Origin: Octopus sinensis
Lineage: Eukaryota
DNA length: 64,000 nucleotides
Assembly: GCF_006345805.1 (NCBI RefSeq)
Contig: NC_042999.1
Location: forward strand, 34,286,001-34,350,000
Direction of reading: 5' to 3'
Part shown: piece after piece, positions 11,770-62,781 of the stretch
How the letters are laid out: each line of letters begins with the position of its first letter
Numbering within the stretch: the first letter of the stretch is position 1
Program-made: the position numbers and the translations under genes
The notes under the pieces: model-generated
The model's database searches: none
What the model was told of the DNA's origin: nothing
What the model saw: only the letters and a program-made list of their open reading frames with translations

Positions 11770-12460
11770 TGAAATGATTGTTCAGCTGGAGCACTTCATA
11801 TTAGAGCACTTGCTGGCTGACAAAGTCGTTAAGATTCCGGATGAAACGGTTTACATTCTGAGTAATGCCGCCCATGTTGGCTTTGCCTTTCTTCCTTTCG
11901 GAGTCAGTAAAGTAAGATCTAGTTGAACACTCATACCAATGTAATCGACTAAGTACCTTCCCCCAAATGTCATGCCTAGTGCGCCAGATGAATCCAAAGC
12001 TAATGAAGTGTATATGCCTTGCCCTAGATGCGGCAGCTGGCACTTTTGGAACGGAGATGTGGCCTCCATTTGTAGGTGCGGTATAACTCAATCGCAAATG
12101 ATGGTGCCAGACTCTTCAGTATCTACCATTCATATAACACTGTGTGTGCCTCACGTCTTTGCTCCAAGAAGTACGATCGTAGCTCCTTTACTCGCTCCCA
12201 GTGGCTCAGCAATGTTCCTCGTGTACTATCTCAGAATTACCTGCAGTTCAGCAATTTTTTAAAGGGTGAAAATTGGCCATAGTTGAGAATATTAATCTAG
12301 ACGGCTAAGGACAAATTTCCTGCAGAGGACTAGCACAGTTTCCTGGTGCCTCGTACTGATGTTTCTCGGAATCTGGCCATATATTGAACGTAGACCGAGG
12401 AGGAGGTGTCAGTAAGAACAATGAGCCCAATACAAAGTAGTCCGTGTAGAAGATATTGGA
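11770..12460 (-). mobile_element. RTE-clade LINE RT C-terminal relic
   Basis: Frameshifted segments resembling YLGS...D.SS..DV..R, ATV..LLYGAETW and TPKGRK..P..TW. Confidence 0.5.
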
Positions 12461-12469
12461 TGAAATTTT

Positions 12470-15400
12470 TGATTAAAATGTTTGGTGAAAATATTGAAAA
12501 GGTGTGCTGAAAATGTTTCATTAAAATGTTTCATGAAAATGTTTCATGAAAATGTTTCATGAAAATATTTGAATATTTGATGAAAATATCTGATGAAAAT
12601 GTTCGAATGTTTGATGAACATGTTTGATGAAAATGTCTAATGAAAATATCTAATGAAAATATTGATGATAATGTTTGATGAAAATATTTGATGAAAATGT
12701 CTGATGAAAATGTTTGATGAAAATGTGTGATGAAAATTTCAGATGAAGATATCTAAGGAAATTGTTGATGATGTTTGATGAAAATTTTTGATGAAAGTGT
12801 CTGATGAAAATTATTTGATGAAAATGTTTGAGGTTATGTTTGGTGTTATTTTGTTGTTGTAGTCATCATCATCATTATTGTTGGTGTTGTTAATGTTATT
12901 ATCATCTACTTACTTATTATCATCTATTTAGTCCTTCGATGTTTACCCGTCTCGTACAAGCGTTTGTCAGTCATTGTAGATGACCAGGAGCAAGAAAATT
13001 ACTTACTTCTACGAATAGATGGTGTCTCATTCAACAGTACATTTCACCACCAAACAAGAGACATAAGTCATATATGTACGGCAAAATTGATATAAAAATG
13101 AAATATAAATATAAAAGTACAGATTGATGAAAGTGTTTGATGAAAATGTTTGATGAAAATGTCTGATGAAAATATCTGATGAAAATGTTTGATGAAAATG
13201 TCTGATGAAAATGTTTGAGGAAAATGTCTGATTAAAACATTTGATGAATATGTTTGACGAAAATGTTTGATGAAAATGTCTGAGGAAAATGTTTGATGAA
13301 AATGTTTCATGAAAATGTTTGATGAAAGTGTTTGAATGTTTGAAAGTTTCATGAAAACATCTGTTGAAAATGTTTGAATGTTTGAATGTTTGAATGTTTC
13401 ATGAAAATGTTTGATGAAAATGTTTGATGAAAATATTTCATAAAAATGTCTGATGAAAATGTTTCATTAAAATGTTTGATGAAAATGTTTGAAAGTTTGA
13501 TGAAAATGTGTGATAAAAAAGCCTGAATGTTTGATGAAAATGTTTGATGAAAACGTTTGATGAAAATATCTGATGAAAATGTTGATCAAAAGGTTCGATG
13601 AATATGTCTGATGAAAATGGTTGATGAAAATGTATAAAGAAATGTTAGATAAAACTATCTGATGAAAATGTCTGATGAAAATGTTTGATGAAAATCTTTG
13701 ACGAAAATACTTGATGAAAATGTTTGATGAAAATGTCTGATGAAAATGTTGATCAAAAGTTTCGATGAATATGTCTGATGAATAGGTTTCATGGAAATGT
13801 TTCATGAAAATGTTTGACGAATATGTTTGAATATTTGACAAAAATGTTTAATAAAAATGTTTGATGAAGATGTCTACTGAAGTATTTGATGAAAATGTCT
13901 GGTGAAAATGTTTGATGAAGATGTCGGATGAAAATATTTGATATGTTTGTTGAAAATGTTCGATGGAAATGTTTGGTGAAAATATCTGTTGAAAACGTTC
14001 CATTTTAAGGTTTGATGAAAATGTTTGATGAATATTTCTGACGAAAATATTTGATGAAAATGTTTGATGAAAATGTCTGTAGAAAATGCACAATGAATAT
14101 GTTTGATGAATATGTTTGGTGAAAGTGTTTGATGAAAATGTCTGATGAAAATGTTTAATGATGAATATGTTTCAGGGAAATGTTTGATGAACATGTTTGA
14201 TGAAAATGTCTGATGAAAATGTTTGAGGAAAATGTTTGATGAATATGTCATGAACAAGTTTGATGAACATGTTTGATGAAAATTTCTGACGAAAATGTTT
14301 GATGAAAATGTTTTATGCAAACATCTGAAGAAAATATTTGATGAACATATCTGATGAAAATGTTTGATGAAAATGTCTGATGAATATGCTTGATGAATAT
14401 GTTTGATAAATATGTTTGATGAAAATGTCCGAATGTTTGCCGAAAACGTTTGACGAAAATGTTTGAAGAAAATGTTTGATTAAAATGTCTACTGAAATGT
14501 TTGATGAAAATGTCTGATGAATTTGTTTGATGAATATGTTTGATGGAAATATTTTGATGAAAATATTTGATGAAAATGTTTGATGAAAATACTTGATGAA
14601 AATGTCTGATGAAATTGTTTGATGAAAATATTTGATGTTTGAAGAAAATATTTGATGGAAACGTTTCTCGAAATTTTTTATGATGTTTATTGAATATATT
14701 TGATGAAAATTTTTTATGAAAATGTCTGAATAAAATGTTTAATGCAAAAGTTTGATGAAAATATCTGATGAAAATGTTATTGGAAAATGTTTGATGGAAA
14801 TGTATGATGGAAATATTTCATGAAAATGTTTGTTAAAAATGTTGATGAAACAGTTTAATGGAAATGTCTGATGAAAATATTTGATGAATATTTTTGATGA
14901 AAATGTCTGATGAAAATGTCTGAGGAAAAAGTTTGATGAAAATGTCTGATGAAGTATCTGATGAAAAGTTTTGATGAAAATGTCTTATGAAAATGTTTGG
15001 TGAAAATGTCTGATGAAAATGTTTGATGAAAATGTCTGATGAATATGTTTGATGAAAATGTTTGATGAAAATGTTTGATGAAAATGTTTGATGAATTTGA
15101 TGAAAATGTTTGATGAAAATATCTGATGAAAATGTTTGATGAAAATGTCTGATGAATATGTTTGATGAATATGTTTGATGATGTTTGATGAAAATGTTTG
15201 ATAAACATCCGATGAAGATGTTTGATGAAAATGTTTGATGAATATGTTTGATGATGTTTGATGAAAATGTTTGATAAACATCTGATGAAGATGTTTGATG
15301 AAAATATCTGATGAAAATGTTTGATGAAAATGTTTGATGAAAATGTTTGATGAAAAAGTTTGATGAAAATGTTTGACGGAAATATATGATGAAAATGTTT

Positions 15401-15495
15401 GATGAAAATGTTTGATGGAAATGTTTGATGAAATTTATTGATGAACATATCTAATGAAAATGCTTCGTGAAAATGTCTGATATGTTTGATGAAAA
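12470..15495. repeat. ~3-kb satellite of 13-bp unit TGATGAAAATGTT (variants ATGTCTGATG, ATATTTGATG)
   Basis: Direct reading; the 13-bp period explains the 13-aa HFHQTFSSNIFIK periodicity of the minus-strand ORFs. Confidence 0.95.
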
Positions 15496-15499
15496 TGTC

Positions 15500-15760
15500 T
15501 CCTGTCCTCGGAACATTCCAGTAAATCTCATTCTCGGAATTTTCCCGGAACTCACATCCTCGGAACTTTCTATTAAGTCCTCCGATTTTTCCAGGAAACC
15601 TAAATCTCGGAAGTTTCCATGATATCTCCCATCCCCGTAACTTTCGAGTATGTTCTCGGAATTTTCCTGGATGTTCCAACCACGGAACTTTCCATGTAGT
15701 CTCTCATCCTTGGAACTTTCCAGAAAGTCTAGACCTTGAACTTTCCAGTAAGTCTCTCAG
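15500..15760. repeat. Short degenerate array of CTCGGAACTTTCC motifs spaced ~20-35 bp
   Basis: About nine variants of CGGAACTTTCC read directly. Confidence 0.75.
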
Positions 15761-25104: not shown

Positions 25105-26300
25105 TACTGTAGTTTCAATTCAGAGCTGCGGCCGTGCTGATGCACCACCGTTTTGTTACACTGTTATGACTGAGAGCTTCCTCCAATATGTGGCACTTGG
25201 TGAGGAATGGAGTTTCATGTAGCTACCTTCATTTGGTAGGTTCATCTGGGACTCTCAATTGGAAGAGGTCCAGCCTTGATTTAAAAACGCCTACATCTAC
25301 ATTGTGTAGGTTCCTCAAGTTCTTTGGGAGAATATTAAAAAGCCGTGTGTCCCTGAAACCCAGGCTGTTGCAGTAACTGTTCCCGAAGCGCGATGGCGTT
25401 GCTGGGATCTTTGGTACTATGGCAATGGTGTAGCTTTCAATGCCAAATATGGCACAATTCTTTCTAGGATCTTCGAGATGTATATTACTGCATACCTCTT
25501 CCGTCTTTGCTCTCGGGAGTAGAACCTTAGCTGTTACAGCCTTTTCCAGTAGCTGCGTAGTTGCTAAGAGGCGATCTTCTTCGTGAAGCTTCGCTGGATT
25601 GCTTCAAGGTCTGCTGTTAATTTTACACGGTTGGGTGACCATAGCTGGGAGCAGTAATCCAAGTGGCTGAGGACGAATGTCCTCCATAGGACCATCATGG
25701 TTTCCTTATCTCTGGTTCTGAATGTTCTCAGAATCCAGCCAGCCAGCCGTGTGCACTTTGTCGCCATCCTGGTAATGTGCACTTGGTAAGAGGTATCATC
25801 ACTCATCGATACCCAGGTCCCTCACTGATTTAGGCTCTGGGATTGGAATTCCCTGTGGACGAGATTATCCTGTAAGTTTCATATTCAGTTTTGGACGCTG
25901 GTAGTGGAGGTCTTGGAATTTTTAAGCATTAATCTACATATTATCCTAAGCCACCTGTAAATTGAGTCCAACTCCTGTTGCAGATGTGCAACATCGCTGG
26001 GATTGTGTATTTCCTGCAAGATATTCGTATCGTCTGCGTAGTTAGCAATTGCAGCTATCCGGGCAGTTGAGGGCATATCTGAGAGGGCCACTATCAAAAG
26101 CAGTGGTCCAAAGACAGTGCCCTGTGAAACACTGTTCATTATTTGTGTTTTTTCATTGAGGTGGCTGCATTGGCCACTACATCCTGACTTCTATCTTTCA
26201 GAAAGTCATATAACCACTCTCCAAGTTTTCCAGCTATGCTGATATCACGCGGTTTGTGGCATATCATACAATGATCCACGTTGTCAAAAGCTTTTGAGTT
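25105..26300 (-). mobile_element. 5'-truncated CR1/L2-type LINE (RT relic and 3' tail)
   Basis: AFDNVDH, SQGTVFGPLL, YADDT, RLAGWILRTFRTRD, LDYCSQLWSP; same family as 58284-60690. Confidence 0.9.
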
Positions 26301-32970: not shown

Positions 32971-33746
32971 TTTTTTCTTTTTTCTTTTTTCTTTTCTTCT
33001 CCCCTTTTTTCTTTTTTCTTTTTTCTTTTCCTTTTTTCTTTTTTATTTTTTATTTTTCCTTTTTCTTTTTTCTTTTTCCCTTTTCTTGTCTCTTTTCTTC
33101 TCTTTCCTTTCTTTTCTTTTCTTTGCTCCACAAAAAAATTCCTTCAGCCTTTAGAAGTCATAACTTAGCAGTCTTGTGAAAAGAACAGTAATGTGGCAAG
33201 TACCTTATCATATAGCATGAAATGATACCCACCTCATTGTGGATTAACCATGGATAAATTCATCGTCTGTGAGTATGAAATTCCTCCTCATATCTCTGGA
33301 AATTTACATCTACACTACGGATTAATTCACCTTCTCTGTGAAGCTAATAAGCTTTTTTTAAAAACCTGTGATAAGACTGTGCATCATCATTAAGGAACTT
33401 CGGAAATCTGTTTACAACCTAAATCTGCTTTTAATGAAATTATCTCCAATACTTCATGAGTATAGCCTCACCCACTAAGATGTTTGGAGAACTCATATGT
33501 ATTTTAGCTGATGAGTACGGGACAATTTTATCTGCTGCAATTTTTGCAACTTTTAATAAAGCCTGTCTTTGTATGAAACAATTGTACTAAAAACTAATCC
33601 ATTCTTGTTGCTTCTTTCTCGTTTATAATCACCCCACATTACTGTATGGTTAACACCATATAGTTTTCTGGTGCATCTAAGTTAAGTACCGCATTCAAGT
33701 CAATTCATTAGAATTGACTTGAATCTTAATTGCTTTTATTGTATAT

Positions 33747-49446: not shown

Positions 49447-49514
49447 TATAACGATATCTGTTTCAACACACGACTTTACATAAAAAATCTTGCACAACAA
49501 ATATTTAAACGTAT

Positions 49515-49581
<67 letters not shown>

Positions 49582-49711
49582 ATATATATCAACAATCAAG
49601 GAACGGCCATAATAGGCCATTCACCCACTAGAAATAACAGCCAAAGCTTCAACCGCAAATAAAAATCAATTCCGTAAACCAGGAGAAAATTTTAAAAACA
49701 TTTACCCTGTA

Positions 49712-49818
49712 ATTTCTTATACGATGCACCGTTTCATCTGCTGTTTAATGGTAAACTAACCTGATTAAATTAAATCAAGCCAATCTTCCATAGGCCCTCA
49801 GATTCTTCAGTAAGAAAT
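49712..49818 (-). ncRNA. Type I hammerhead ribozyme, copy 1
   Basis: Same fold as 51089-51195 on the reverse strand; predicted cleavage 3' of the A complementary to 49720. Confidence 0.85.
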
Positions 49819-50201
49819 AGCCCAAGTCGGAACAGATATTTTCACGAGGCATTTCCGACCCTGCCAAGGTAATATCTGACCTAAAATTTTCAAATCGTCG
49901 CACTCGCGCCAAATTTATCGGCAGCAAATAAATATAAGCCGTCGATTACATTACGGAATTAACCAGAAAATTCATAATTAATCAACATAGGGTGGCAAAA
50001 AAAATTTTGTAGAATTTTTTGCCACCAGCGGCCTAGTGGGAAAAAATTAAATAGTCATAGACCATTTTTAAGTTCAACATCAACAAAAAGGAACGGCCAT
50101 AATAGGCCATTCACCCACTAGAAATAACAGCCAAAGCTTCAACCGCAAATAAAAATCAATTCCGTAAACCAGGAGAAAATTTAAAAAACATTTACCCTGT
50201 A

Positions 50202-50308
50202 ATTTCTTATACGATGCACCGTTTCATCTGCTGTTTAATGGTAAACTAACCTGATTAAATTAAATCAAGCCAATCTTCCATAGGCCCTCAGATTCTTCAG
50301 TAAGAAAT
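50202..50308 (-). ncRNA. Type I hammerhead ribozyme, copy 2
   Basis: Intact core and stems on the reverse strand. Confidence 0.85.
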
Positions 50309-50692
50309 AGCCCAAGTCGGAACAGATATTTTCATGAGGCATTTCCGACCCTGCCAAGGTAATATCTGACCTAAAATTTTCAAATCGTCGCACTCGCGCC
50401 AAATTTATCGGCAGCAAATAAATATAAGCCGTCGATTCCATTACGGAATTAACCAGAAAATTCATAATTAATCAATATAGGGTGGCAAAAAAAAATTGTA
50501 GAATTTTTTTGCCACCAGCGGCCCAGTGGGAAAAAATTAAATAGTCATAGACCATTTTTAAGTTCAACATCAACAATCAAGGAACGGCCATAATAGGCCA
50601 TTCACCCACTAGAAATAACAGCCAAAGCTTCAACCGCAAATAAAAATCAATTCCGTAAACAAGGAGAAAATTTAAAAAACATTTACCCTGTA

Positions 50693-50799
50693 ATTTCTTA
50701 TACGATGCACCGTTTCATCTCATGTTTAATGGTAAACAAACCTGATTAAATTAAATCAAGCCAATCTTCCATAGGCCCTCAGATTCTTCAGTAAGAAAT
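50693..50799 (-). ncRNA. Type I hammerhead ribozyme, copy 3 (stem II weakened)
   Basis: Core intact; stem II 3' strand reads UGAGAU, giving 4 bp then a G.G mismatch. Confidence 0.75.
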
Positions 50800-51088
50800 A
50801 GCCCAAGTCGGAACAGATATTTTCACGAGGCATTTCCGACCCTGCCAAGGTAATATCTGACCTAAAATTTTCAAATCGTCGCACTCGCGCCAAATTTATC
50901 GGCAGCAAATAAATATAAGCCGTCGATTCCATTACGGAATTAACCAGAAAATTCATAATTAATCAATATAGGGTGGCAAAAAAAATTTTGTAGAATTTTC
51001 TTGCCACCAGCGGCCTAGTGGGAAAAAATTAAATAGTCATAGACAGGGTCGGAAATGCCTCGTGAAAATATCTGTTCCGACTTGGGCT

Positions 51089-51195
51089 ATTTCTTACTGA
51101 AGAATCTGAGGGCCTATGGAAGATTGGCTTGATTTAATTTAATCAGGTTAGTTTACCATTAAACATCAGATGAAACGGTGCATCGTATAAGAAAT
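51089..51195 (+). ncRNA. Type I hammerhead ribozyme, copy 4 (reference copy)
   Basis: Stem I ATTTCTTA 51089-96 with TAAGAAAT 51188-95; CTGAAGA 51097-103; stem II ATCTGA 51104-09 with TCAGAT 51166-71; GAAA 51172-75; stem III ACG 51175-77 with CGT 51184-86; H17=A 51187. Confidence 0.88.
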
Positions 51196-51583
51196 TACAG
51201 GGTAAATGTTTTTTTAAATTTTCTCCTGGTTTACGGAATTGATTTTTATTTGCGGTTGAAGCTTTGGCTGTTATTTCTAGTCGGTGAATGGCCTATTATG
51301 GCCGTTCCTTGATTGTTGATGTTGAACTTAAAAATAGTCTATGACTATTTAATTTTTTCCCACTAGGCCGCTGGTGGCAAAAAAATTCTACAAAATTTTT
51401 TTTTGCCACCCTATATTGATTAATTATGAATTTTCTGGTTAATTCCGTAATGGAATCGACGGCTTATATTTATTTGCTGCCGATAAATTTGGCGCGAGTG
51501 CGACGATTAGAAAATTTTAGGTCAGATATTACCTTGGCAGGGGTCGGAAATGCCTCGTGAAAATATCTGTTCCGACTTGGGCT

Positions 51584-51690
51584 ATTTCTTACTGTAGAAT
51601 CTGAGGGCCTATGGAAGATTGGCTTGATTTAATTTAATCAGGTTAGTTTACCATTAAACAGCAGATGAAACGGTGCATCGTATAAGAAAT
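51584..51690 (+). ncRNA. Hammerhead copy 5 with core mutation CUGUAGA (likely inactive)
   Basis: A6 replaced by T at 51595. Confidence 0.7.
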
Positions 51691-52073
51691 TACAGGGTAA
51701 ATGTTTTTTAAATTTTCTCCTGGTTTACGGAATTGATTTTTATTTGCGGTTGAAGCTTTGGCTGTTATTTCTAGTGGGTGAATGGCCTATTATGGCCGTT
51801 CCTTGATTGTTGATGTTGAACTTAAAAATGGTCTATGACTATTTAATTTTTCCCACTAGGCCGCTGGTGGCAAAAAAATTCTACAAAATTTTTTTTGCCA
51901 CCCTATATTGATTAATTATGAATTTTTGGTTAATTCCGTAATGGAATCGACGGCTTATATTTATTTGCTGCCGATAAATTTGGCGCGAGTGCGACGATTT
52001 GAAAATTTTAGGTCAGATATTACCTTGGCAGGGTCGGAAATGCCTCGTGAAAAATTCTGTTCCGACTTGGGCT

Positions 52074-52180
52074 ATTTCTTACTGAAGAATCTGAGGGCCT
52101 ATGGAAGATTGGCTTGATTTAATTTAATCAGGTTAGTTTACCATTAAACATCAGATGAAACGGTGCATCGTATAAGAAAT
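52074..52180 (+). ncRNA. Type I hammerhead ribozyme, copy 6
   Basis: Intact; H17 at 52172. Confidence 0.85.
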
Positions 52181-52564
52181 TACAGGGTAAATGTTTTTTA
52201 ATTTTCTCCTTGTTTACGGAATTGATTTTTATTTGCGGTTGAAGCTTTGGCTGTTATTTCTAGTGGGTGAATGGCCTATTATGGCCGTTCCTTGATTCTT
52301 GATGTTGAACTTAAAAATGGTCTATGACTATTTAATTTTTTCCCACTAGGCCGCTGGTGGCAAAAAAATTCTACAAATTTTTTTTTGCCACCCTATATTG
52401 ATTAATTATGAATTTTCTGTTTAATTCCGTAATGGAATCGACGGCTTATATTTATTTGCTGCCGATAAATTTGGCGCGAGTGCGACGATTTGAAAATTTT
52501 AGGTCAGATATTACCTTGGCAGGGTCGGAAATGCCTCGTGAAAATATCTGTTCCGACTTGGGCT

Positions 52565-52671
52565 ATTTCTTACTGAAGAATCTGAGGGCCTATGGAAGAT
52601 TGGCTTGATTTAATTTAATCAGGTTAGTTTACCATTAAACAGCAGATGAAACGGTGCATCGTATAAGAATT
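52565..52671 (+). ncRNA. Type I hammerhead ribozyme, copy 7
   Basis: Core intact; distal stem I mismatch (TAAGAATT); H17 at 52663. Confidence 0.8.
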
Positions 52672-53054
52672 TACAGGGTAAATGTTTTTTTAAATTTTCT
52701 CCTTTTACGGAATTGATTTTATTTGCGGTTGAAGCTTTGGCTGTTATTTCTAGTGGGTGAATGGCCTATTATGGCCGTTCCTTGATTGATGATGTTGAAC
52801 TTAAAAATGGTCTATGACTATTTAATTTTTTCCCACTAGGCCGCTGGTGGCAAAAAAATTCTACAAAATTTTTTTTGCCACCCTATATTGATTAATTATG
52901 AATTTTCTGGTTAATTCCGTAATGGAATCGACGGCTTATTTTATTTGCTGCCGATAAATTTGGCGCGAGTGCGACGATTTGAAAATTTTAGGTCAGATAT
53001 TACCTTGGCAGGGTCGGAAATGCCTCGTGAAAATATCTTGTTCCGACTTGGGCT

Positions 53055-53161
53055 ATTTCTTACTGAAGAATCTGAGGGCCTATGGAAGATTGGCTTGATT
53101 TAATTTAATCAGGTTAGTTTACCATTAAACATCAGATGAAACGGTGCATCGTATAAGAAAT
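53055..53161 (+). ncRNA. Type I hammerhead ribozyme, copy 8
   Basis: Intact; H17 at 53153. Confidence 0.85.
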
Positions 53162-53545
53162 TACAGGGTAAATGTTTTTTAAATTTTCTCCTTGTTTACG
53201 GAATTGATTTTTATTTGCGGTTGAAGCTTTGGCTGTTATTTCTAGTGGGTGAATGGCCTATTATGGCCGTTCCTTGATTCTTGATGTTGAACTTAAAAAT
53301 GGTCTATGACTATTTAATTTTTTCCCACTAGGCCGCTGGTGGCAAAAAAATTCTACAAATTTTTTTTGCCACCCTATATTGATTAATTATGAATTTTCTG
53401 GTTAATTCCGTAATGGAATCGACGGCTTATATTTATTTGCTGCCGATAAATTTGGCGCGAGTGCGACGATTTGAAAATTTTAGGTCAGATATTACCTTGG
53501 CAGGGTCGGAAATGCCTCGTGAAAATATCTGTTCCGACTTGGGCT

Positions 53546-53652
53546 ATTTCTTACTGAAGAATCTGAGGGCCTATGGAAGATTGGCTTGATTTAATTTAAT
53601 CAGGTTAGTTTACCATTAAACAGCAGATGAAACGGTGCATCGTATAAGAATT
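53546..53652 (+). ncRNA. Type I hammerhead ribozyme, copy 9
   Basis: Core intact; TAAGAATT variant; H17 at 53644. Confidence 0.8.
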
Positions 53653-54036
53653 TACAGGGTAAATGTTTTTTAAATTTTCTCCTGGTTTACGGAATTGATT
53701 TTTATTTGCGGTTGAAGCTTTGGCTGTTATTTCTAGTGGGTGAATGGCCTATTATGGCCGTTCCTTGATTGATGATGTTGAACTTAAAAATGGTCTATGA
53801 CTATTTAATTTTTTCCCACTAGGCCGCTGGTGGCAAAAAAATTCTACAAATTTTTTTTGCCACCCTATATTGATTAATTATGAATTTTCTGGTTAATTCC
53901 GTAATGGAATCGACGGCTTATATTTATTTGCTGCCGATAAATTTGGCGCGAGTGCGACGATTTGAAAATTTTAGGTCAGATATTACCTTGGCAGGGTCGG
54001 AAATGCCTCGTGAAAATATTTGTTCCGACTTGGGCT

Positions 54037-54143
54037 ATTTCTTACTGAAGAATCTGAGGGCCTATAGAAGATTGGCTTGATTTAATTTAATCAGGTTAGT
54101 TTACCATTAAACAGCAGATGAAACGGTGCATCGTATAAGAAAT
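54037..54143 (+). ncRNA. Type I hammerhead ribozyme, copy 10
   Basis: Intact; H17 at 54135. Confidence 0.85.
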
Positions 54144-54527
54144 TACAGGGTAAATGTTTTTTAAATTTTCTCCTGGTTTACGGAATTGATTTTTATTTGC
54201 GGTTGAAGCTTTGGCTGTTATTTCTAGTGGGTGAATGGCCTATTATGGCCGTTCCTTGATTGTTGATGTTGAACTTAAAAATGGTCTATGACTATTTAAT
54301 TTTTTCCCACTAGGCCGCTGGTGGCAAAAAAATTCTACAAAATTTTTTTTGCCACCCTATATTGATTAATTATGAATTTTCTGGTTAATTCCGTAATGGA
54401 ATCGACGGCTTATATTTATTTGCTGCCGATAAATTGGCGCGAGTGCGACGATTTGAAAATTTTAGGTCAGATATTACCTTGGCAGGGTCGGAAATGCCTC
54501 GTGAAAATATCTGTTCCGACTTGGGCT

Positions 54528-54634
54528 ATTTCTTACTGAAGAATCTGAGGGCCTATGGAAGATTGGCTTGATTTAATTTAATCAGGTTAGTTTACCATTA
54601 AACATCAGATGAAACGGTGCATCGTATAAGAAAT
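54528..54634 (+). ncRNA. Type I hammerhead ribozyme, copy 11
   Basis: Intact; H17 at 54626. Confidence 0.85.
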
Positions 54635-55019
54635 TACAGGGTAAATGTTTTTTAAATTTTCTCCTTGTTTACGGAATTGATTTTTATTTGCGGTTGAAGC
54701 TTTGGCTGTTATTTCTAGTGGGTGAATGGCCTATTATGGCCGTTCCTTGATTCTTGATGTTGAACTTAAAAATGGTCTATGACTATTTAATTTTTTCCCA
54801 CTAGGCCGCTGGTGGCAAAAAAATTCTACAAATTTTTTTTTGCCACCCTATATTGATTAATTATGAATTTTCTGTTTAATTCCGTAATGGAATCGACGGC
54901 TTATATTTATTTGCTGCCGATAAATTTGGCGCGAGTGCGACGATTTGAAAATTTTAGGTCAGATATTACCTTGGCAGGGTCGGAAATGCCTCGTGAAAAT
55001 ATCTGTTCCGACTTGGGCT

Positions 55020-55126
55020 ATTTCTTACTGAAGAATCTGAGGGCCTATAGAATATTGGCTTGATTTAATTTAATCAGGTTAGTTTACCATTAAACAGCAG
55101 ATGAAACGGTGCATCGTATAAGAAAT
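55020..55126 (+). ncRNA. Type I hammerhead ribozyme, copy 12
   Basis: Intact core; H17 at 55118. Confidence 0.85.
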
Positions 55127-55356
55127 TACAGGGTAAATGTTTTTTAAATTTTCTCCTGGTTTACGGAATTGATTTTTATTTGCGGTTGAAGCTTTGGCTG
55201 TTATTTCTAGTGGGTGAATGGCCTATTATGGCCGTTCCTTGATTGTTGATGTTGAACTTAAAAATGGTCTATGACTATTTAATTTTTTCCCACTAGGCCG
55301 CTGGTGGCAAAAATTCTACAATTTTTTTGTTTTTGCCACCCTATATTGATTAATTA

Positions 55357-55402
<46 letters not shown>

Positions 55403-55531
55403 CATAAATATGTATGCAGATATATATAATATATATAAATATGTATATATATATATGTACATATGTATATGTACATATATATATGTATGCGGATATATAT
55501 ATATACATATATATATGAGTGTGTGCGTGCG

Positions 55532-55576
<45 letters not shown>

Positions 55577-55599: not shown

Positions 55600-55910
55600 A
55601 GGGTGCTGCACTCAAATTTCGACAAAACAATGGAAACGCCTGAAAGTTTCAAACACATTTATTTTAATATGGGGTAGGACCGCCTTTAGCAGTAATTACA
55701 GCTTGAATTCTACGAGGTATGGACTAATACAAAGTTCGAATTGTTTGCAAAGGAATTTTCGTCCATTTTTCAGCTAAAACTGTCACCAGTTCTTGTAGTG
55801 ATGATGGTGGAGGATATCGACTCCTTTGCTATTTTTCTAAAATTCACCATGAATGTTCAATAATATTGAGTTCTGATGACTGTGCTGGCTAAATAAGATG
55901 TTCAACTTCA
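55600..55910 (-). mobile_element. Tc1-type transposon 3' end
   Basis: PAQSSELNIIE...RYPPPSSLQELVTVLAEKWTKIPLQTI...SIPRRIQAVITAKGGPTPY stop. Confidence 0.85.
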
Positions 55911-56239: not shown

Positions 56240-56760
56240 AAGAATCATGAGGATATTTGGTCTTCAACGTAGCCAGCGAACAGTTTCGCATTGTTCGCAT
56301 GTGTGAAAAAAGCGATGGTTGCATGTGCTTAGTGCCTCACTATGTTTATTTAGCAGTGCTGGAGAGTTGTGCTTTAATATTTGTAATGCCTCCTTCAGGC
56401 AAAGCTTGCAGGTTGAGCGTTGACCTCGGTAGGGAAGCCCAGAGTCCAGTATGAACCATGACAGAGTGTAGGATGCAAAGCTTGCAGGTTGAGCGTTGAC
56501 CTCGGTAGGGAAGCCCAGAGTCCAGTATGAACCATGACAGAGTGTAGGATATATTTGTATTTTTGAGATGATGTATGTGGTTGGCGAGCGTTGTAGATTT
56601 ACTATGTTTATTGCATCGATAAGAATGGAGGTGAGTGGCATATCGTTGCTTAAAATGTTTGGTTGATCCTATGAATATGGCTGTGTAACATATTAAGGAC
56701 AGTGCATTTGTAAATTACATTATATCTTCTGCAATTACAATTAGGTGAATTTTGGGGATA
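56240..56760 (-). pseudogene. Penelope-like GIY-YIG endonuclease relic
   Basis: NVIYKCTV...FIGSTKHFKQRYATH...STTLANHIHHLK...YTLSWFIL...PY....TCKLCLKE...LLNKHSE...CNH; 76-bp tandem duplication at 56399-56550. Confidence 0.85.
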
Positions 56761-58283: not shown

Positions 58284-60690
58284 CCTTAAATCCTTAAATC
58301 CTTAAAAATGTTTTAGCCCGAAGGCCGCGGCCATGCTGGGGCACCACCGCTGAATGAGCTACACTAGTTTGTGAATCCACCTCTGATACGTGGCACTTGA
58401 TCAACAAGGGAGTTCGATGCTGCTGCCCGCATCCGTGTCTCCTGTCGTGAGGTAGGTTCATCTGGGACTCCCAACAAGAAGAGATCCAGTTTAGTTTCAA
58501 AGAAACCCACATCCACACCATGTAAGTCTCTCAGGCATTTAGGGAGGATGTTAAAGAGCTGTGGTCCTCTGAAACCAAGCTGTTGCAGTATCTGGACCTG
58601 TATTTTGATGGTGATGTTGGAATCCTTGGCACCACGCAGCGGCGCCCCGTTCTGCGGTTGGAGTAACTTTGAATGCCAAAGTTTGGGACAAGACCCTCCA
58701 GGATTTTCCAGATGTATATCACTGCATATCTCTCCCGCCTCCGCTCCAGGGAGAAGAGGTTTAATACCTTCAGTCTTTCCCAGTAGCTGACATTTTGCAT
58801 TGAGACGATTTTCTTTGTGTAGCTTCTCTGAGTTGCTTCGAGTTCTGCTGTTTGTTTTATATTGTGTGGTGACCAAAGTTGGGAGCAGTAGTCCAAGCGG
58901 CTGAGGACAAATGTTTTCCATAGGACCATCAGTGTCTCCTTCTCTCTTGTTCTGAAAGTTCGGAGAATCCATCCAGCTAGCCGTCTGCATTTTATCACCA
59001 GATTAGCAATATGCATTTGGAAAGATGCATCATTGCTCATGTCAATGCCCAGGTCACGCACTGATTTTGACTCAGGGATTGCAATTCTTCCTGGGCCAGT
59101 GTATCCAGTCTTCACGTCATTTACCTTTGTGTGCCAGTAGCGCAGGGCCTGGAACTTACCTGCATTAAACTGCATGTTGTTGTCCTCAGCCCACCTGTAT
59201 ATTGTGTCCAGCTCATGTTGCAGATGCGCAATATTTTCAGGGTTTTGTATTGCGTGGGAGACTTTTGTGTCATCTGCATAGCTAGCAAGGGTGGTCATCG
59301 TAGCAACTGAAGGCATGTCTGAAAGGGCCACTATGAACATCAGTGGCCCCAAGACAGTGCCCTGTGGGACACCGCTTGTTATTTGCGTTTCCCTGGAGGT
59401 GGCTCCATTGCTCACAACTGCCTGTTTTCTGTCTTTTAGGAAGTTGTGCAGCCACTCTCCAAGTTTCCCGCCTATGCCGAGACCACGCAGTTTGTGACAG
59501 ATCATACCATGGTCGACTTTATCAAAGTCAAGATATATTACATCCACATTTGAGCCATTTAGTAGCTGTTTCAACACCCAGTCATAGTGTTGCAGGAGCT
59601 GTGTTAGGCAGCCTCTACCTGGTCGAAATCCATGCTGGGTGTCAGACAGTAAGTCATTTTCTTCAAGGAACATGATTAGTTTCTTACGGACTATTCGTTC
59701 CATGACTTTGCTGATGTGTGAGGTCAGAGAGATAGGCCTATAATTTTTAGCATCTGCTCTGCTACCTCCCTTATGGATAGGGCATATTACCCCCTCTTTC
59801 AGTTTGACTGGGAGCTTACCACTTGCAAGAAAGCTCTGAAAAAGAAGCTGTAGCGGTTTTGCAAGGGCTCGTTTGCACGATTTGAGAAGGATCGCTGGGA
59901 ATCCATCAGGTCCAGCAGCTGAGTTTGTGTCAATCTCATCAATGGCTAGTGTGATATCATCTTCTTCGATGTTGATGTACTCAATTTTTGTCTCTTTGGT
60001 CGCTGGTAAAGTGGCAAAGAATTCTTCTGGGTTGTTTACTTGCCTGTGTCCTAGAGGTGTAGTGAACACACTTTGGAACTGTTCATTCAGTATTTCACTT
60101 ATCCTCGTGGGATTTCCTGTGAGAGAGCCATCTTTTTGGAAGAGAGGTCCTATTCTCTGGTGCACTGTGGCTGTCTCTTTGGCAAACTTAAAGAAAGCTT
60201 TAGGGTTTGATTTTATATTTTCTATTACCCAAGCTTCTTTATCTGCTCTCTCCTTTTCATGGGACTGATGTAGACTTTTCTCAGTTTCCATTAGCATTCT
60301 TTCGAGCCGAGACTTCTCACCACTTTTGGTGTGCTTGCTCAGGCGGTTTGCAATCCTTGTCCGTCGTCTCATAAGAATCCTCCTTTCTCTAGGGATCCTG
60401 TTTTTGTTCTTGTGTGTGCTGGCCCTGCACATTGGGACATATTTGTCACATATGGCTTGTATTATGGACATGAAGTGTTTGTGTTTCGTGTTTATGTCCG
60501 GTGTGGAGAGACATTCAGGCCAATCCTGTTTGAGGATCTCTTTCTCAATCGACTTCCAGTTGGCTTTATGAAAGTTTAAGTTGGAGAGATGGTGGGTGCT
60601 TCGTATAGGCTGTGTGTCTGCGGGGGCTTTTGTTCCATACATAGACAGCTCTATTATGTTGTGATCCGAGATCATTGTCGGCATCACACT
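58284..60690 (-). mobile_element. Young 5'-truncated CR1/L2-type LINE with 3' UTR stem-loop and (TTTAAGGA)n tail
   Basis: Continuous ORF2 from end of APE (SDHNII) through RT; tail at 58284-58305. Confidence 0.92.
58531..60687 (-). CDS. LINE ORF2 reverse transcriptase, 718-aa open frame (5'-truncated, frameshift near C-terminus; probably non-functional)
   Basis: NYRPISLTSHISKVMERIV, QHGFRPGRGC, GVPQGTVLGPL, YADD, YLDF[AKAF missing]DKVDH; natural C-terminus continues in the 58364-58990 frame. Confidence 0.85.
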   Translation of the reverse strand: MMPTMISDHNIIELSMYGTKAPADTQPIRSTHHLSNLNFHKANWKSIEKEILKQDWPECLSTPDINTKHKHFMSIIQAICDKYVPMCRASTHKNKNRIPRERRILMRRRTRIANRLSKHTKSGEKSRLERMLMETEKSLHQSHEKERADKEAWVIENIKSNPKAFFKFAKETATVHQRIGPLFQKDGSLTGNPTRISEILNEQFQSVFTTPLGHRQVNNPEEFFATLPATKETKIEYINIEEDDITLAIDEIDTNSAAGPDGFPAILLKSCKRALAKPLQLLFQSFLASGKLPVKLKEGVICPIHKGGSRADAKNYRPISLTSHISKVMERIVRKKLIMFLEENDLLSDTQHGFRPGRGCLTQLLQHYDWVLKQLLNGSNVDVIYLDFDKVDHGMICHKLRGLGIGGKLGEWLHNFLKDRKQAVVSNGATSRETQITSGVPQGTVLGPLMFIVALSDMPSVATMTTLASYADDTKVSHAIQNPENIAHLQHELDTIYRWAEDNNMQFNAGKFQALRYWHTKVNDVKTGYTGPGRIAIPESKSVRDLGIDMSNDASFQMHIANLVIKCRRLAGWILRTFRTREKETLMVLWKTFVLSRLDYCSQLWSPHNIKQTAELEATQRSYTKKIVSMQNVSYWERLKVLNLFSLERRRERYAVIYIWKILEGLVPNFGIQSYSNRRTGRRCVVPRIPTSPSKYRSRYCNSLVSEDHSSLTSSLNA

Positions 60691-61613: not shown

Positions 61614-62376
61614 AACCGTATCGAGTTGTTTTTGTTTTTCGCATTGCTTCTATAAATGGGAAAGTAGTCCCGCTATATATACTTTAAACTATAATTTAAA
61701 TAAATTGTAAGTAGGATTTATATTATAAATTCTTCTATTTAGATTTGAATTAATATATAACACAACGTTTTACCATAACTATATAGGCATGTGTGTATGG
61801 AAATGTATATGTATGCATTTTGTAAAGATATATATATTTATATATATATATATATATCTTTATATAGATATATAGATATAGCTATGTATATATGAATATA
61901 TGTATATATGAATATTCTTTTACTCTTTTATTCTTTTACTTGTTTCAGCCATCCGGCTGAGGCCATGCTGGGGCATGTATATATGAATATATGTATTATA
62001 ATGAAATCGATTATAGAAGTAGATAATAATAGATTTAAATTTAGGAATCTACGTAATTTCAGTTAAATTATTTATTTAAAATTAAGCTCGCTCTCAAAAC
62101 GATTTTTTTGTTGATTTTTTTTTTGAGCGTTAACAGTTATAAAAAGTTTCAATCGTTAATTTTCATGGATTATTTATGAAGATATGTTAATCCAATAAAA
62201 GCTAATTATATCTAAACATTCTTGAAAAACATGGGTTCATTAATGAAGTGGAAACAGTTGTAATTTATGAGACGTGTCATTTATTAGTATAAAATAATTG
62301 AAAGCAATTGAATTTATTATTTAATAATTCAATTCTGTAATTGTCCAATTTGTTGTTTTGGTTTCCATTTCTAATT

Positions 62377-62432
<56 letters not shown>

Positions 62433-62781
62433 CATATATATTATATATATACAAACGTACACTATCCATTTATGTATATATACATACACACACATACATA
62501 TATACATATGCATATTCGCATACACAAGTTTATATATTCAGTTATATCTATACCTATATACATATATCATTACAAAATGCATACTTATACATTTCCATAC
62601 ACACATGCCTATATAGTTATGGTAACACATTGTGTTATATATTAATTCAAATCTAAATAGAAGAATTTATAATATAAATCCTACTTACAATTTATTTAAA
62701 TTATAGTTTAAAGTATATATAGGTGGACTACTTTCCCATTTATAGAAGGAATGCGAAAAACAAAAACAACTCGATACGGTT
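61614..62781. repeat. 152-bp inverted repeat pair (61614-61765 and 62630-62781)
   Basis: About 3 mismatches by eye; encloses ~860 bp of microsatellite-rich DNA; adjoins a PLE relic. Confidence 0.85.

What the first reader, a model, noticed from the sequence alone, without database searches (positions are those of the whole stretch)
49588..55361. Tandem array of 12 hammerhead ribozymes in ~491-bp monomers: candidate cephalopod non-LTR retrozyme
Seen: each unit has AUUUCUUA-CUGAAGA-AUCUG(A)...(U)CAGAU-GAAA-CG-GUGCAU-CGU-A-UAAGAAAU. That is a perfect 8-bp stem I, canonical CUGANGA and GAAA cores, A15.1-U16.1 pair and GUA triplet in type I topology. Predicted + strand cut sites at 51187, 51682, 52172, 52663, 53153, 53644, 54135, 54626 and 55118 are spaced 490-495 nt apart. 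Established: tandem type I HHR repeats in other metazoans (non-LTR retrozymes, newt satellite 2) are transcribed, self-cleave to monomers, circularise and are thought to be mobilised by Penelope-like elements. Inference: this locus encodes a ~491-nt circular RNA replicon-like element. I do not recognise a described cephalopod family with this monomer, but could not search.
Basis: partly seen in the sequence, partly recalled or inferred. Interest (0 to 1): 0.93.

Follow-up and report, generated by a model that had tools for sequence, protein, structure and literature searches.

The report
Hammerhead-ribozyme tandem repeat (retrozyme) in microsatellite
A 5.8-kb block of ~491-bp repeats, each carrying a self-cutting hammerhead RNA motif, looks like a new family of the known animal "retrozyme" mobile elements, and its layout resembles the insertion pattern described for Penelope-like retrotransposons.

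Summary
The repeat and the motifs are real. TRF finds 3.0 copies (49588-51044) and 8.8 copies (51044-55361) of a 490-491-bp unit at 97% identity.

Three corrections:
- It is not one head-to-tail array. A 3-copy block on the - strand and a 9-copy block on the + strand meet head-to-head at 51044.
- One copy has a dead core (CUGUAGA), two have a stem I mismatch, and one has a weakened helix II.
- Rfam does not recognise the motif at any threshold.

A generic HHR descriptor is expected 0.003 times per window by chance. The unit fits the sequence-level criteria for metazoan non-LTR retrozymes: 36% GC, non-coding, a strongly self-paired predicted circle, and a quasi-palindromic helix III. The whole block sits inside a (TA)n microsatellite with an inverted, 5'-truncated partner. 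That is the insertion pattern described for Penelope-like elements.

Cleavage, circles, copy number and covariation could not be tested, because no other family member was retrievable. The host looks cephalopod only from one LINE hit at 57% identity (Argonauta hians). Verdict: probable new member of a known kind, of moderate interest.

The parts
49512..49589 (.). Left flank: (TA)n microsatellite abutting the 3' end of the minus-sense block. Presumed half of the target site.
   Evidence: TRF; sequence
49588..51044 (-). Minus-sense block of 2.97 units. Read on the - strand it starts at monomer position 148 (at 51044) and ends at position 131 (at 49588). It is the inverted, 5'-truncated partner of the main array.
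   Evidence: TRF; blastn of the monomer; alignment
49712..49818 (-). HHR copy with intact core. Predicted cut between + coordinates 49720|49719.
50202..50308 (-). HHR copy with intact core. Predicted cut between 50210|50209.
50693..50799 (-). HHR copy with intact core. Helix II is weakened to 4 bp by a C to G change. Predicted cut between 50701|50700.
51040..51048 (.). Head-to-head junction of the two blocks, with a 1-nt overlap (C at 51044). It is asymmetric (monomer position 148 on one side, 348 on the other), so it is not a mirror-image fold-back.
51044..55361 (+). Plus-sense array of 8.8 units. It starts at monomer position 348 and ends at position 241 against (AT)n.
   Evidence: TRF
51089..51195 (+). 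HHR copy, intact. Cut after 51187.
51584..51690 (+). HHR copy with core mutation CUGUAGA (A6 to U), predicted inactive. The cut site would be after 51682.
52074..52180 (+). HHR copy, intact, 6-bp proximal helix II. Cut after 52172.
52565..52671 (+). HHR copy with a stem I mismatch (UAAGAAUU). Cut after 52663.
53055..53161 (+). HHR copy, intact. Cut after 53153.
53546..53652 (+). HHR copy with a stem I mismatch (UAAGAAUU). Cut after 53644.
54037..54143 (+). HHR copy, intact core. Cut after 54135.
54528..54634 (+). HHR copy, intact. Cut after 54626.
55020..55126 (+). HHR copy, intact core. Cut after 55118.
52356..52392 (+). Example of the 13-bp hairpin GGUGGCAAAAAAA...UUUUUUUGCCACC present in every monomer (monomer positions 184-220). 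It is a conspicuous structural element of the predicted circle.
55360..55516 (.). Right flank: (AT)n microsatellite abutting the 3' end of the plus-sense array. Presumed other half of the target site.
   Evidence: TRF; sequence

Best explanation
The locus is a genomic insertion of a non-autonomous, non-coding retroelement of the metazoan non-LTR retrozyme kind. The unit is a ~491-bp, AT-rich monomer with one type I hammerhead ribozyme.

Inferred life cycle:
1. Multimeric sense transcripts fold the HHR, either alone or as a double hammerhead through the quasi-palindromic helix III.
2. [quoted passage not shown]
3. A host RtcB-type ligase circularises the monomers into a branched, highly paired circle.
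4. A reverse transcriptase supplied in trans, most likely from a Penelope-like element, copies the circle or an uncleaved multimer by target-primed reverse transcription.

Shown here: the motif, the repeat, the composition, the predicted structure, and the architecture of the insertion. That architecture is a position inside a (TA)n tract, multicopy head-to-tail units, and an inverted 5'-truncated block at the 5' end.

Inferred only: transcription, cleavage, ligation and the identity of the mobilising enzyme.

This particular copy has since evolved as DNA. Shared variants are interleaved among non-adjacent units, and some ribozymes are damaged.
For: - Repeat: period 490/491, 97% matches.
- Motifs: 12 motifs with C3-A9, G12-A14, A15.1-U16.1 and H17 = A. 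Eleven have an intact core.
- Chance expectation: 0.003 per window for the loose descriptor, 0 of 300 shuffles for the strict one.
- HHR fold: the canonical fold is only 1.4 kcal/mol above the MFE (-29.9 vs -31.3). The motif region has z = -4.3 against shuffles.
- Helix III: ACGGUGCAUCGU forms a 12-bp intermolecular duplex at -17.5 kcal/mol. This matches the palindromic helix III described for metazoan type I HHRs that act as dimers (PMC4209133).
- Predicted circle: -138.3 kcal/mol, z = -4.9, 61% paired, GC 36.4%. The antisense strand folds much worse, at -97 kcal/mol.
- Coding capacity: ORFs are at most 69 aa and have no homologues.
- Published retrozyme criteria: low GC, tandem type I HHRs, no LTR/PBS/PPT, self-paired circles (PMC7229834, PMC7761336). 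Consensus lengths of 51-972 bp are reported (bioRxiv 10.64898/2026.07.22.740005).
- Insertion pattern: (TA)n on both sides, while only about 4.4% of the window is (TA)n (my sum of the rows). The inverted 5'-truncated block lies at the 5' end. This matches the PLE insertion description and the (TA)n target preference in PMC8557442.
- 3' ends: neither block ends at the cleavage site (monomer positions 131 and 241). That argues against priming on a self-cleaved linear monomer and fits a circular or multimeric template.
Against: - No Rfam hammerhead model matches at any threshold.
- Pair 10.1-11.1 is A-U rather than the highly conserved G-C.
- Helix II is about 68 nt, and no canonical loop 1/loop 2 tertiary contacts can be recognised. 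Catalytic efficiency is therefore uncertain.
- There is no covariation. All substitutions in helices among the 12 copies break pairs. The HHR is not significantly more conserved than the rest of the monomer: 8 of 107 variable columns against 44 of 392.
- No other family member, transcript or circle could be found.
- No PLE reverse transcriptase lies in the window. The only RT ORFs are LINE-type.
- Shared variants interleaved among units (P3/P5/P8/M2 and P4/P6) are not what a single rolling-circle cDNA would give.
- (TA)n tracts are frequent here, about one per 1.8 kb, so the target-site argument is only moderately strong.
Confidence: 0.68

Rival explanations
1. It is a fossil satellite. A ~491-bp tandem repeat, originally derived from a hammerhead-bearing element such as a PLE pseudo-LTR, has been amplified and homogenised purely at the DNA level by unequal crossing-over, gene conversion and inverted duplication. 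It no longer has, or never had, a circular-RNA cycle.
For: - Shared variants are interleaved among non-adjacent units.
- One core is dead and three helices are weakened.
- All stem substitutions disrupt pairs and the HHR shows no excess conservation.
- No transcripts or other loci were found.
- Hammerhead satellites of about 500 bp are known, such as pDo500 of cave crickets (PMC2837043).
Against: - Eleven of 12 cores remain intact.
- The sense strand keeps a strongly non-random fold (z = -4.9).
- A position inside (TA)n with an asymmetric inverted 5'-truncated partner is the pattern of retrotransposition by PLE-type machinery, not of satellite expansion.
- The two explanations are not exclusive: known retrozymes also behave as satellites after insertion.
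Confidence: 0.2
2. It is the pseudo-LTR part of an autonomous Penelope-like element, or a deleted PLE, rather than a separate non-autonomous family.
For: - PLE pLTRs carry type I HHRs and form partial tandems with inverted 5'-truncated copies.
- Retrozymes have been argued to derive from pLTRs.
- A GIY-YIG-like ORF remnant lies about 0.9 kb to the right of the array.
Against: - There is no RT or EN coding sequence inside or contiguous with the array; ORFs are at most 69 aa.
- Nearly nine uniform 491-bp units is not the usual layout of ORF plus pLTR.
- The GIY-YIG-like ORF is separated from the array by microsatellite and other sequence, is antisense to the main block, has no adjacent RT, and its homologues are mostly short proteins without RT.
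- PLE hammerheads are usually minimal, lacking helix III, unlike this one.
Confidence: 0.08
3. The hammerhead resemblance is a coincidence inside an ordinary AT-rich satellite.
For: No Rfam match at any threshold. Non-canonical A10.1-U11.1 pair. Very long helix II.
Against: - Descriptor expectation is 0.003 per window, and 0 of 300 shuffles for the strict form.
- Beyond the descriptor, the motif has a quasi-palindromic helix III, a stable helix II hairpin and tandem context. All are independent hallmarks of metazoan type I HHRs.
- A second, unrelated HHR-like motif in the same window (33502-33592) scores 19.4 bits against Rfam Hammerhead_1, below the gathering score. It hints that such elements may live in this genome.
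Confidence: 0.03

Closest known systems
Metazoan non-LTR retrozymes (Cervera & de la Pena 2020, PMC7229834), e.g. the Mytilus galloprovincialis, Acropora millepora and axolotl families
   Same: - Type I HHR once per unit.
- Head-to-tail tandem repeats.
- GC below 45%.
- No coding capacity and no LTR/PBS/PPT.
- Predicted highly self-paired circle.
- As in the mussel families, no archetypal loop 1/loop 2 contacts.
- Proposed dependence on PLE machinery.
   Different: - The unit (491 nt) is above the 170-400 nt range of that paper, although within the 51-972 bp range of the 2026 preprint.
- Helix II is a 68-nt extended hairpin instead of about 4 bp plus a loop.
- Pair 10.1-11.1 is A-U.
- Stem I is 8 bp.
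- Rfam does not detect it.
- Expression and cleavage are untested here.
pDo500 satellite of Dolichopoda cave crickets (PMC2837043) and newt/axolotl satellite 2
   Same: Tandem satellite units with an embedded hammerhead; pDo500 units are about 463-505 bp. Double-hammerhead cleavage through helix III has been proposed. Natural variation at pair 10.1-11.1 is recorded in pDo500.
   Different: Those families have demonstrated self-cleavage and cross-species conservation with compensatory changes. Here there is only one locus and no covariation. There is no sequence similarity, and the helix II architecture differs.
Penelope-like element pseudo-LTR hammerheads (PMC4209133) and PLE insertion architecture (PMC8557442)
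   Same: Type I topology, dimer-capable helix III, partial tandems, an inverted 5'-truncated copy at the 5' end, and insertion into (TA)n microsatellites.
   Different: No RT/GIY-YIG ORF is associated with the array. [quoted passage not shown] This one has a 3-bp helix III with a 6-nt loop and no bulge.
Rfam Hammerhead_1 (RF00163)
   Same: Same core boxes, same type I topology, same cleavage triplet class (GUH).
   Different: No match at any threshold for the array motif. The unrelated solo motif at 33502-33592 scores 19.4 bits, below the gathering score of 34.

Membership tests
Hammerhead ribozyme, type I (structural definition) | Core C3-U4-G5-A6-N7-G8-A9 and G12-A13-A14 | tested here: met
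   CUGAAGA in 11 of 12 copies (one is CUGUAGA). GAA is present in all 12.
Hammerhead ribozyme, type I (structural definition) | A15.1-U16.1 pair, H17 not G, cleavage 3' of H17, open helix I | tested here: met
   GAAA-CG...CG-U-A|UAAGAAAU in all 12 copies. The 5' and 3' ends lie in helix I.
Hammerhead ribozyme, type I (structural definition) | Three helices around the core | tested here: met
   Helix I is 8 bp. Helix II is 5-6 bp plus an extended hairpin. Helix III is 3 bp. The constrained fold is -29.9 against an MFE of -31.3 kcal/mol.
Hammerhead ribozyme, type I (structural definition) | Conserved G10.1-C11.1 pair | tested here: not met
   The pair is A-U in all 12 copies. Variation at this pair is recorded in the self-cleaving pDo500 family, so this weakens the call without excluding it.
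Hammerhead ribozyme, type I (structural definition) | Loop 1/loop 2 tertiary contacts | tested here: inconclusive
   No canonical loops are present. Helices I and II both end in internal or multibranch loops. Mussel retrozyme HHRs also lack the archetypal contacts.
Hammerhead ribozyme, type I (structural definition) | Self-cleavage | not testable with these tools
   Needs in vitro transcription.
Rfam hammerhead families (RF00163 and clan CL00010) | Score at or above the gathering threshold | tested here: not met
   No hit at the gathering score, at E<=10 on 6.2 kb, or at E<=10 on 151 nt.
Metazoan non-LTR retrozyme | [quoted passage not shown] | tested here: met
   8.8 + 3.0 units of 490-495 bp.
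Metazoan non-LTR retrozyme | Low GC (below 45-50%), non-coding, no LTR/PBS/PPT | tested here: met
   GC 36.4%. ORFs are at most 69 aa and have no homologues. No tRNA-like or terminal-repeat features were found.
Metazoan non-LTR retrozyme | Monomer predicted to fold into a stable, highly self-paired circle | tested here: met
   Circular MFE -138.3 kcal/mol, z = -4.9, 61% paired.
Metazoan non-LTR retrozyme | Multiple genomic loci and a family with a conserved HHR and compensatory changes | not testable with these tools
   No eukaryotic genome collection was searchable. Exact-pattern scans of metagenome, viral and prokaryotic contigs found nothing. Within the locus there is no covariation.
Metazoan non-LTR retrozyme | Expression as linear and circular RNA | not testable with these tools
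   No RNA data were available. ORF-based look-ups in assemblies found nothing.
Metazoan non-LTR retrozyme | Co-occurrence with Penelope-like elements in the genome | tested here: inconclusive
   No PLE RT lies in the window. A GIY-YIG-like remnant at 56264-56730 has uncertain affiliation. Octopus genomes do contain PLEs (PMC13282606), but the source species is not established.
Autonomous Penelope-like element | RT plus GIY-YIG ORF flanked by pLTRs | tested here: not met
   No such ORF lies in or next to the array.

The most novel reading that the evidence does not exclude
The unit may define a lineage of hammerheads with a long, structured helix II domain and an A10.1-U11.1 pair that Rfam models do not detect here. 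The locus may also preserve a footprint of how such circles are integrated: two cDNAs primed from the two nicked strands of a (TA)n target on a circular or multimeric template and joined 5'-to-5'. That would be locus-level structural evidence that Penelope-type target-primed reverse transcription mobilises retrozymes. A by-product is a 1.46-kb inverted repeat. If read through, it would give long dsRNA, a possible trigger for small-RNA or ADAR targeting of the family.
Probability: 0.2. Interest if true: 0.6.

Novelty: new member of a known kind. Interest (0 to 1): 0.4.

Why it matters
If the family is active, it would extend circular-RNA retrozymes to cephalopod-like molluscs. It would also supply a hammerhead variant (68-nt helix II, A-U at 10.1-11.1) that Rfam models fail to detect here, so covariance-model surveys could under-count such elements.

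The more useful point is architectural. The same three features that characterise Penelope-like insertions are visible at a retrozyme locus: a (TA)n target, head-to-tail multimers, and an inverted 5'-truncated partner. This turns the proposal that PLEs mobilise retrozymes into something that can be tested genome-wide, by asking whether other copies show the same junctions.

The natural A6-to-U copy is a ready-made negative control for cleavage assays.

Tried and rejected
- Rfam at the gathering score on the whole window, at E<=10 on the array, and at E<=10 on a single 151-nt motif gave no hammerhead. The only hits near the array were low-complexity miRNA look-alikes in the flanking (TA/TG)n tract.
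- I looked for other family members. The recurrent 66-aa array ORF had no exact gene record and no homologue. A 21-mer and a 26-mer from the HHR gave nothing in metagenome contigs (two scans), viral contigs or prokaryotic genome contigs.
- blastn of the monomer against the rest of the window found no dispersed or degenerate copies.
- Species identification through the LINE RT gave, as the best named hit, Argonauta hians at 57% identity. The closest hits (73% and 63%) are unnamed Logan/ENA contigs. Accession strings were not found in the literature.
- I tested whether the GIY-YIG-like ORF next to the array is a PLE endonuclease. The Pfam match is sub-threshold, the word-based search found nothing, and the exhaustive search gave 726 mostly short homologues without RT. 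The link to PLEs is therefore not shown.
- A Tc1/mariner-like C-terminal fragment that I thought I recognised at about 55650-55900 (- strand) got no Pfam support.
- A fold-back assembly artefact as the source of the inverted block is rejected. The junction is asymmetric (monomer position 148 against 348), and the minus copies carry private variants.
- tRNA/SINE ancestry: no tRNA-like sequence was found.

Full report
OBSERVATION

Tandem Repeats Finder reports two adjoining arrays. One runs 49588-51044 (period 490, 3.0 copies, 97% matches). The other runs 51044-55361 (period 491, 8.8 copies, 97% matches). Reading the sequence and aligning units cut at the predicted ribozyme sites shows that the left array is the reverse complement of the right one.

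A pattern scan finds 12 motifs, nine on the + strand and three on the - strand. Each has the form AUUUCUUA-CUGANGA-(68 nt)-GAAA-CGGUGCAUCGU-A-UAAGAAAU. The - strand sites fall between 49720|49719, 50210|50209 and 50701|50700.

Not every unit is canonical:
- Copy 51584-51690 reads CUGUAGA. This is A6 to U in the invariant core.
- Two copies (52565-52671 and 53546-53652) have a U/U mismatch in stem I.
- Copy 50693-50799 has lost one helix II pair.
- The sixth helix II pair is A-U in five copies and A/G in seven.

IS IT MORE THAN CHANCE?

I wrote a generic type I descriptor: stem I of at least 5 bp, CUGANGA, helix II of at least 4 bp with up to 90 nt enclosed, GAAA, helix III of at least 2 bp closed by A15.1-U16.1, and H17 not G. 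I ran it on 300 dinucleotide-preserving shuffles of the window, with the array collapsed to one unit. The mean was 0.003 hits per shuffle. The strict form (I >=8, II >=5, III >=3) gave 0 hits in 300 shuffles.

The motif region folds better than shuffles (z = -4.3). The canonical hammerhead fold is only 1.4 kcal/mol above the unconstrained minimum (-29.9 against -31.3 kcal/mol).

Rfam 15, however, gives no hammerhead match. This holds at the gathering score, at E<=10 on 6.2 kb, and at E<=10 on a single 151-nt stretch. The likely reasons, which are my inference, are:
- the 68-nt helix II;
- the 6-nt loop 3;
- an A-U pair at 10.1-11.1, where the G-C pair is described as highly conserved (PMC4209133).

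Changes at that pair do occur in the experimentally self-cleaving pDo500 satellite (PMC2837043).

ANATOMY OF THE UNIT

The 492-nt consensus has 36.4% GC. As a circle it folds to -138.3 kcal/mol, with z = -4.9 against 200 shuffles and 61% of bases paired. The antisense circle reaches only -97 kcal/mol. This asymmetry fits a functional sense RNA.

Helix II is a long imperfect hairpin. Its distal 14-bp stem is stable. Each unit also carries a 13-bp hairpin, GGUGGCAAAAAAA...UUUUUUUGCCACC.

Helix III plus loop 3 (ACGGUGCAUCGU) is a quasi-palindrome. Two copies form a 12-bp duplex at -17.5 kcal/mol. This is the arrangement that lets metazoan type I hammerheads with weak helix III cleave as double hammerheads in multimeric transcripts (PMC4209133; PMC7229834).

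ORFs in the array are at most 69 aa. The recurrent 66-aa ORF has no gene record and no homologue. There is no tRNA-like sequence.

ARCHITECTURE OF THE INSERTION

I number the monomer from the cut site.
- The + block begins at position 348 (coordinate 51044), runs through eight full units, and ends at position 241 (coordinate 55361), directly against (AT)n at 55360-55516.
- The - block, read in its own sense, begins at position 148 (coordinate 51044), runs through two full units, and ends at position 131 (coordinate 49588), directly against (TA)n at 49512-49589.

So two sense-outward blocks are joined 5'-to-5' with a 1-nt overlap, and both 3' ends lie in a (TA)n tract. The junction is asymmetric and the minus copies carry private variants. 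It is therefore not a mirror-image fold-back artefact.

Summing the TRF AT-dinucleotide rows, (TA)n covers about 4.4% of the window outside the array. A random insertion would land in such a tract about one time in 23.

Neither block ends at the ribozyme cut site. This argues against priming on a self-cleaved linear monomer. It fits a circular or uncleaved multimeric template.

EVOLUTION WITHIN THE LOCUS

Full units differ at 3-14 positions. Variable columns number 8 of 107 in the hammerhead and 44 of 392 elsewhere, which is no significant difference.

On the 35 pairs of the hammerhead structure there is no covariation. Every departure is a broken pair.

Shared variants are interleaved among non-adjacent units: P3/P5/P8/M2 share one variant, P3/P5/P8 share another, and P4/P6 share two. 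The present array is therefore not a pristine copy of a single circle. Either a heterogeneous multimer was the template, or DNA-level exchange followed insertion.

So this locus gives no evidence for or against selection on the ribozyme. Other family members would be needed, and I could not reach any.

SURROUNDINGS AND HOST

The window is AT-rich and packed with microsatellites and transposon debris.
- A 718-aa LINE-type RT ORF lies at 58531-60687 on the - strand (RVT_1, E = 4.7e-25). Its best named relative is an Argonauta hians protein at 57% identity. The closest hits (73% and 63%) are unnamed. This is weak support for a cephalopod, octopod-like host, and nothing more.
- A degenerate second RT fragment lies at about 25.2-26.2 kb.
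- No PLE reverse transcriptase is present.
- About 0.9 kb right of the array lies a GIY-YIG-like ORF remnant at 56264-56730 on the - strand. It is broken by a perfect 76-bp tandem duplication at 56399-56550. It has 726 mostly short homologues without RT. A link to PLE endonucleases is possible but not shown.

A SECOND HAMMERHEAD-LIKE MOTIF

The descriptor also hit + 33502-33592: UUUUAG-CUGAUGA-(60 nt)-GAAA-CAAUUGU-A-CUAAAA, with a perfectly palindromic helix III.
- A descriptor requiring a palindromic helix III found 0 hits in 200 shuffles.
- Rfam Hammerhead_1 aligns end to end with a 54-nt insert in helix II, at 19.4 bits (gathering score 34, E = 0.016 on 136 nt).
- The motif is unrelated in sequence to the array unit.
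- It sits in a 617-bp unique segment with a (TA)n tract directly on its right side; on the left it abuts (TTCTTTT)n, with (AT)n beyond that.
- Its hammerhead fold is unfavourable (-6.3 against -12.4 kcal/mol). It is probably a decayed solo copy of another family.

It hints that hammerhead-bearing elements with long helix II may be a feature of this genome.

MECHANISM

Most likely (confidence 0.68), this is an inserted copy of a non-LTR retrozyme. The following steps are inferred from the published model (PMC7229834, PMC7761336), not shown here:
1. Sense multimers are transcribed.
2. They cut after GUA, singly or as double hammerheads.
3. The 491-nt products are ligated by a host RtcB-type ligase into circles.
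4. The circles are reverse-transcribed in trans.

The insertion architecture adds locus-level support for PLE-type target-primed reverse transcription, with cDNA primed on both strands of the (TA)n target and joined 5'-to-5'.

Rivals:
- A DNA-level satellite that merely retains a hammerhead relic (0.2). This is not exclusive of the main explanation.
- The pLTR part of a PLE (0.08).
- Coincidence (0.03).

COMPARISON AND NOVELTY

The class is known. Non-LTR retrozymes have been described in cnidarians, molluscs (mussel), rotifers, arthropods and amphibians. Unit lengths of 51-972 bp are reported in a 2026 survey. Hammerhead satellites of about 500 bp are known from cave crickets. The giant squid genome paper already counted 235 Rfam Hammerhead_1 loci (PMC6962438).

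I found no paper describing a cephalopod retrozyme family or this unit, but Dfam and Repbase could not be searched.

The locus is therefore best filed as a new member of a known kind, with two unusual traits:
- a 68-nt helix II and A10.1-U11.1, which make it invisible to Rfam;
- an informative insertion structure.

Interest: 0.4.

Noticed in passing
window 33502-33592 (+), within the unique segment 33125-33741: A second, unrelated type I hammerhead-like motif: CUGAUGA, GAAA, perfectly palindromic helix III ACAAUUGU, 6-bp stem I, and a 60-nt helix II with four G-U pairs. Rfam Hammerhead_1 scores 19.4 bits (gathering score 34), and 0 of 200 shuffles match the palindromic descriptor. Its hammerhead fold is weak (-6.3 against an MFE of -12.4 kcal/mol). 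The segment has (TA)n directly on its right; on the left it abuts (TTCTTTT)n, with (AT)n beyond. It is probably a decayed solo copy of another hammerhead-bearing element.
   Followed up: partly
window 56264-56730 (-), duplication at 56399-56550: A GIY-YIG-like ORF remnant (Pfam GIY-YIG E = 0.066, sub-threshold) broken by a 100% identical 76-bp tandem duplication that shifts the frame. It has 726 mostly short homologues in the representative library, none shown to carry an RT. It lies about 0.9 kb from the array, and its relation to Penelope-like endonucleases is unresolved.
   Followed up: partly
window 58531-60687 (-), and 25232-26190 (-): A 718-aa LINE-type reverse transcriptase ORF (RVT_1). 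It lacks the N-terminal endonuclease present in its ~1000-aa homologues, so it is 5'-truncated. The best named relative is from Argonauta hians at 57% identity. A degenerate fragment of a related RT lies at 25.2-26.2 kb.
   Followed up: partly
window 12459-12831 and 13124-15498, then 15503-15759: A large 13-bp satellite, (TTGATGAAAATGT)n, with about 187 copies at 74% matches. It is followed by 25-26-bp and 75-bp repeats. It creates long spurious ORFs on the - strand.
   Followed up: no
window 61614-61852 and 62543-62781: An inverted repeat with 239-nt arms, 95% complementary, separated by 690 nt. It may be the termini of a DNA transposon or a fold-back element.
   Followed up: no
window 55411-55548: Sub-threshold Rfam matches to mir-297, mir-466, mir-3149 and similar families fall entirely in the (TA)n/(TG)n microsatellite next to the array. 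They are low-complexity artefacts.
   Followed up: yes
window 49588-51044 versus 53357-54257 and other + units: The inverted blocks give arms up to 901 nt long at 99% complementarity. Any read-through transcript would form a long perfect dsRNA hairpin.
   Followed up: no
whole window: (TA)n/(AT)n tracts are very frequent: 32 TRF tracts covering about 4.4% of the sequence outside the array. There are no tRNA genes and no Rfam family at the gathering score.
   Followed up: yes
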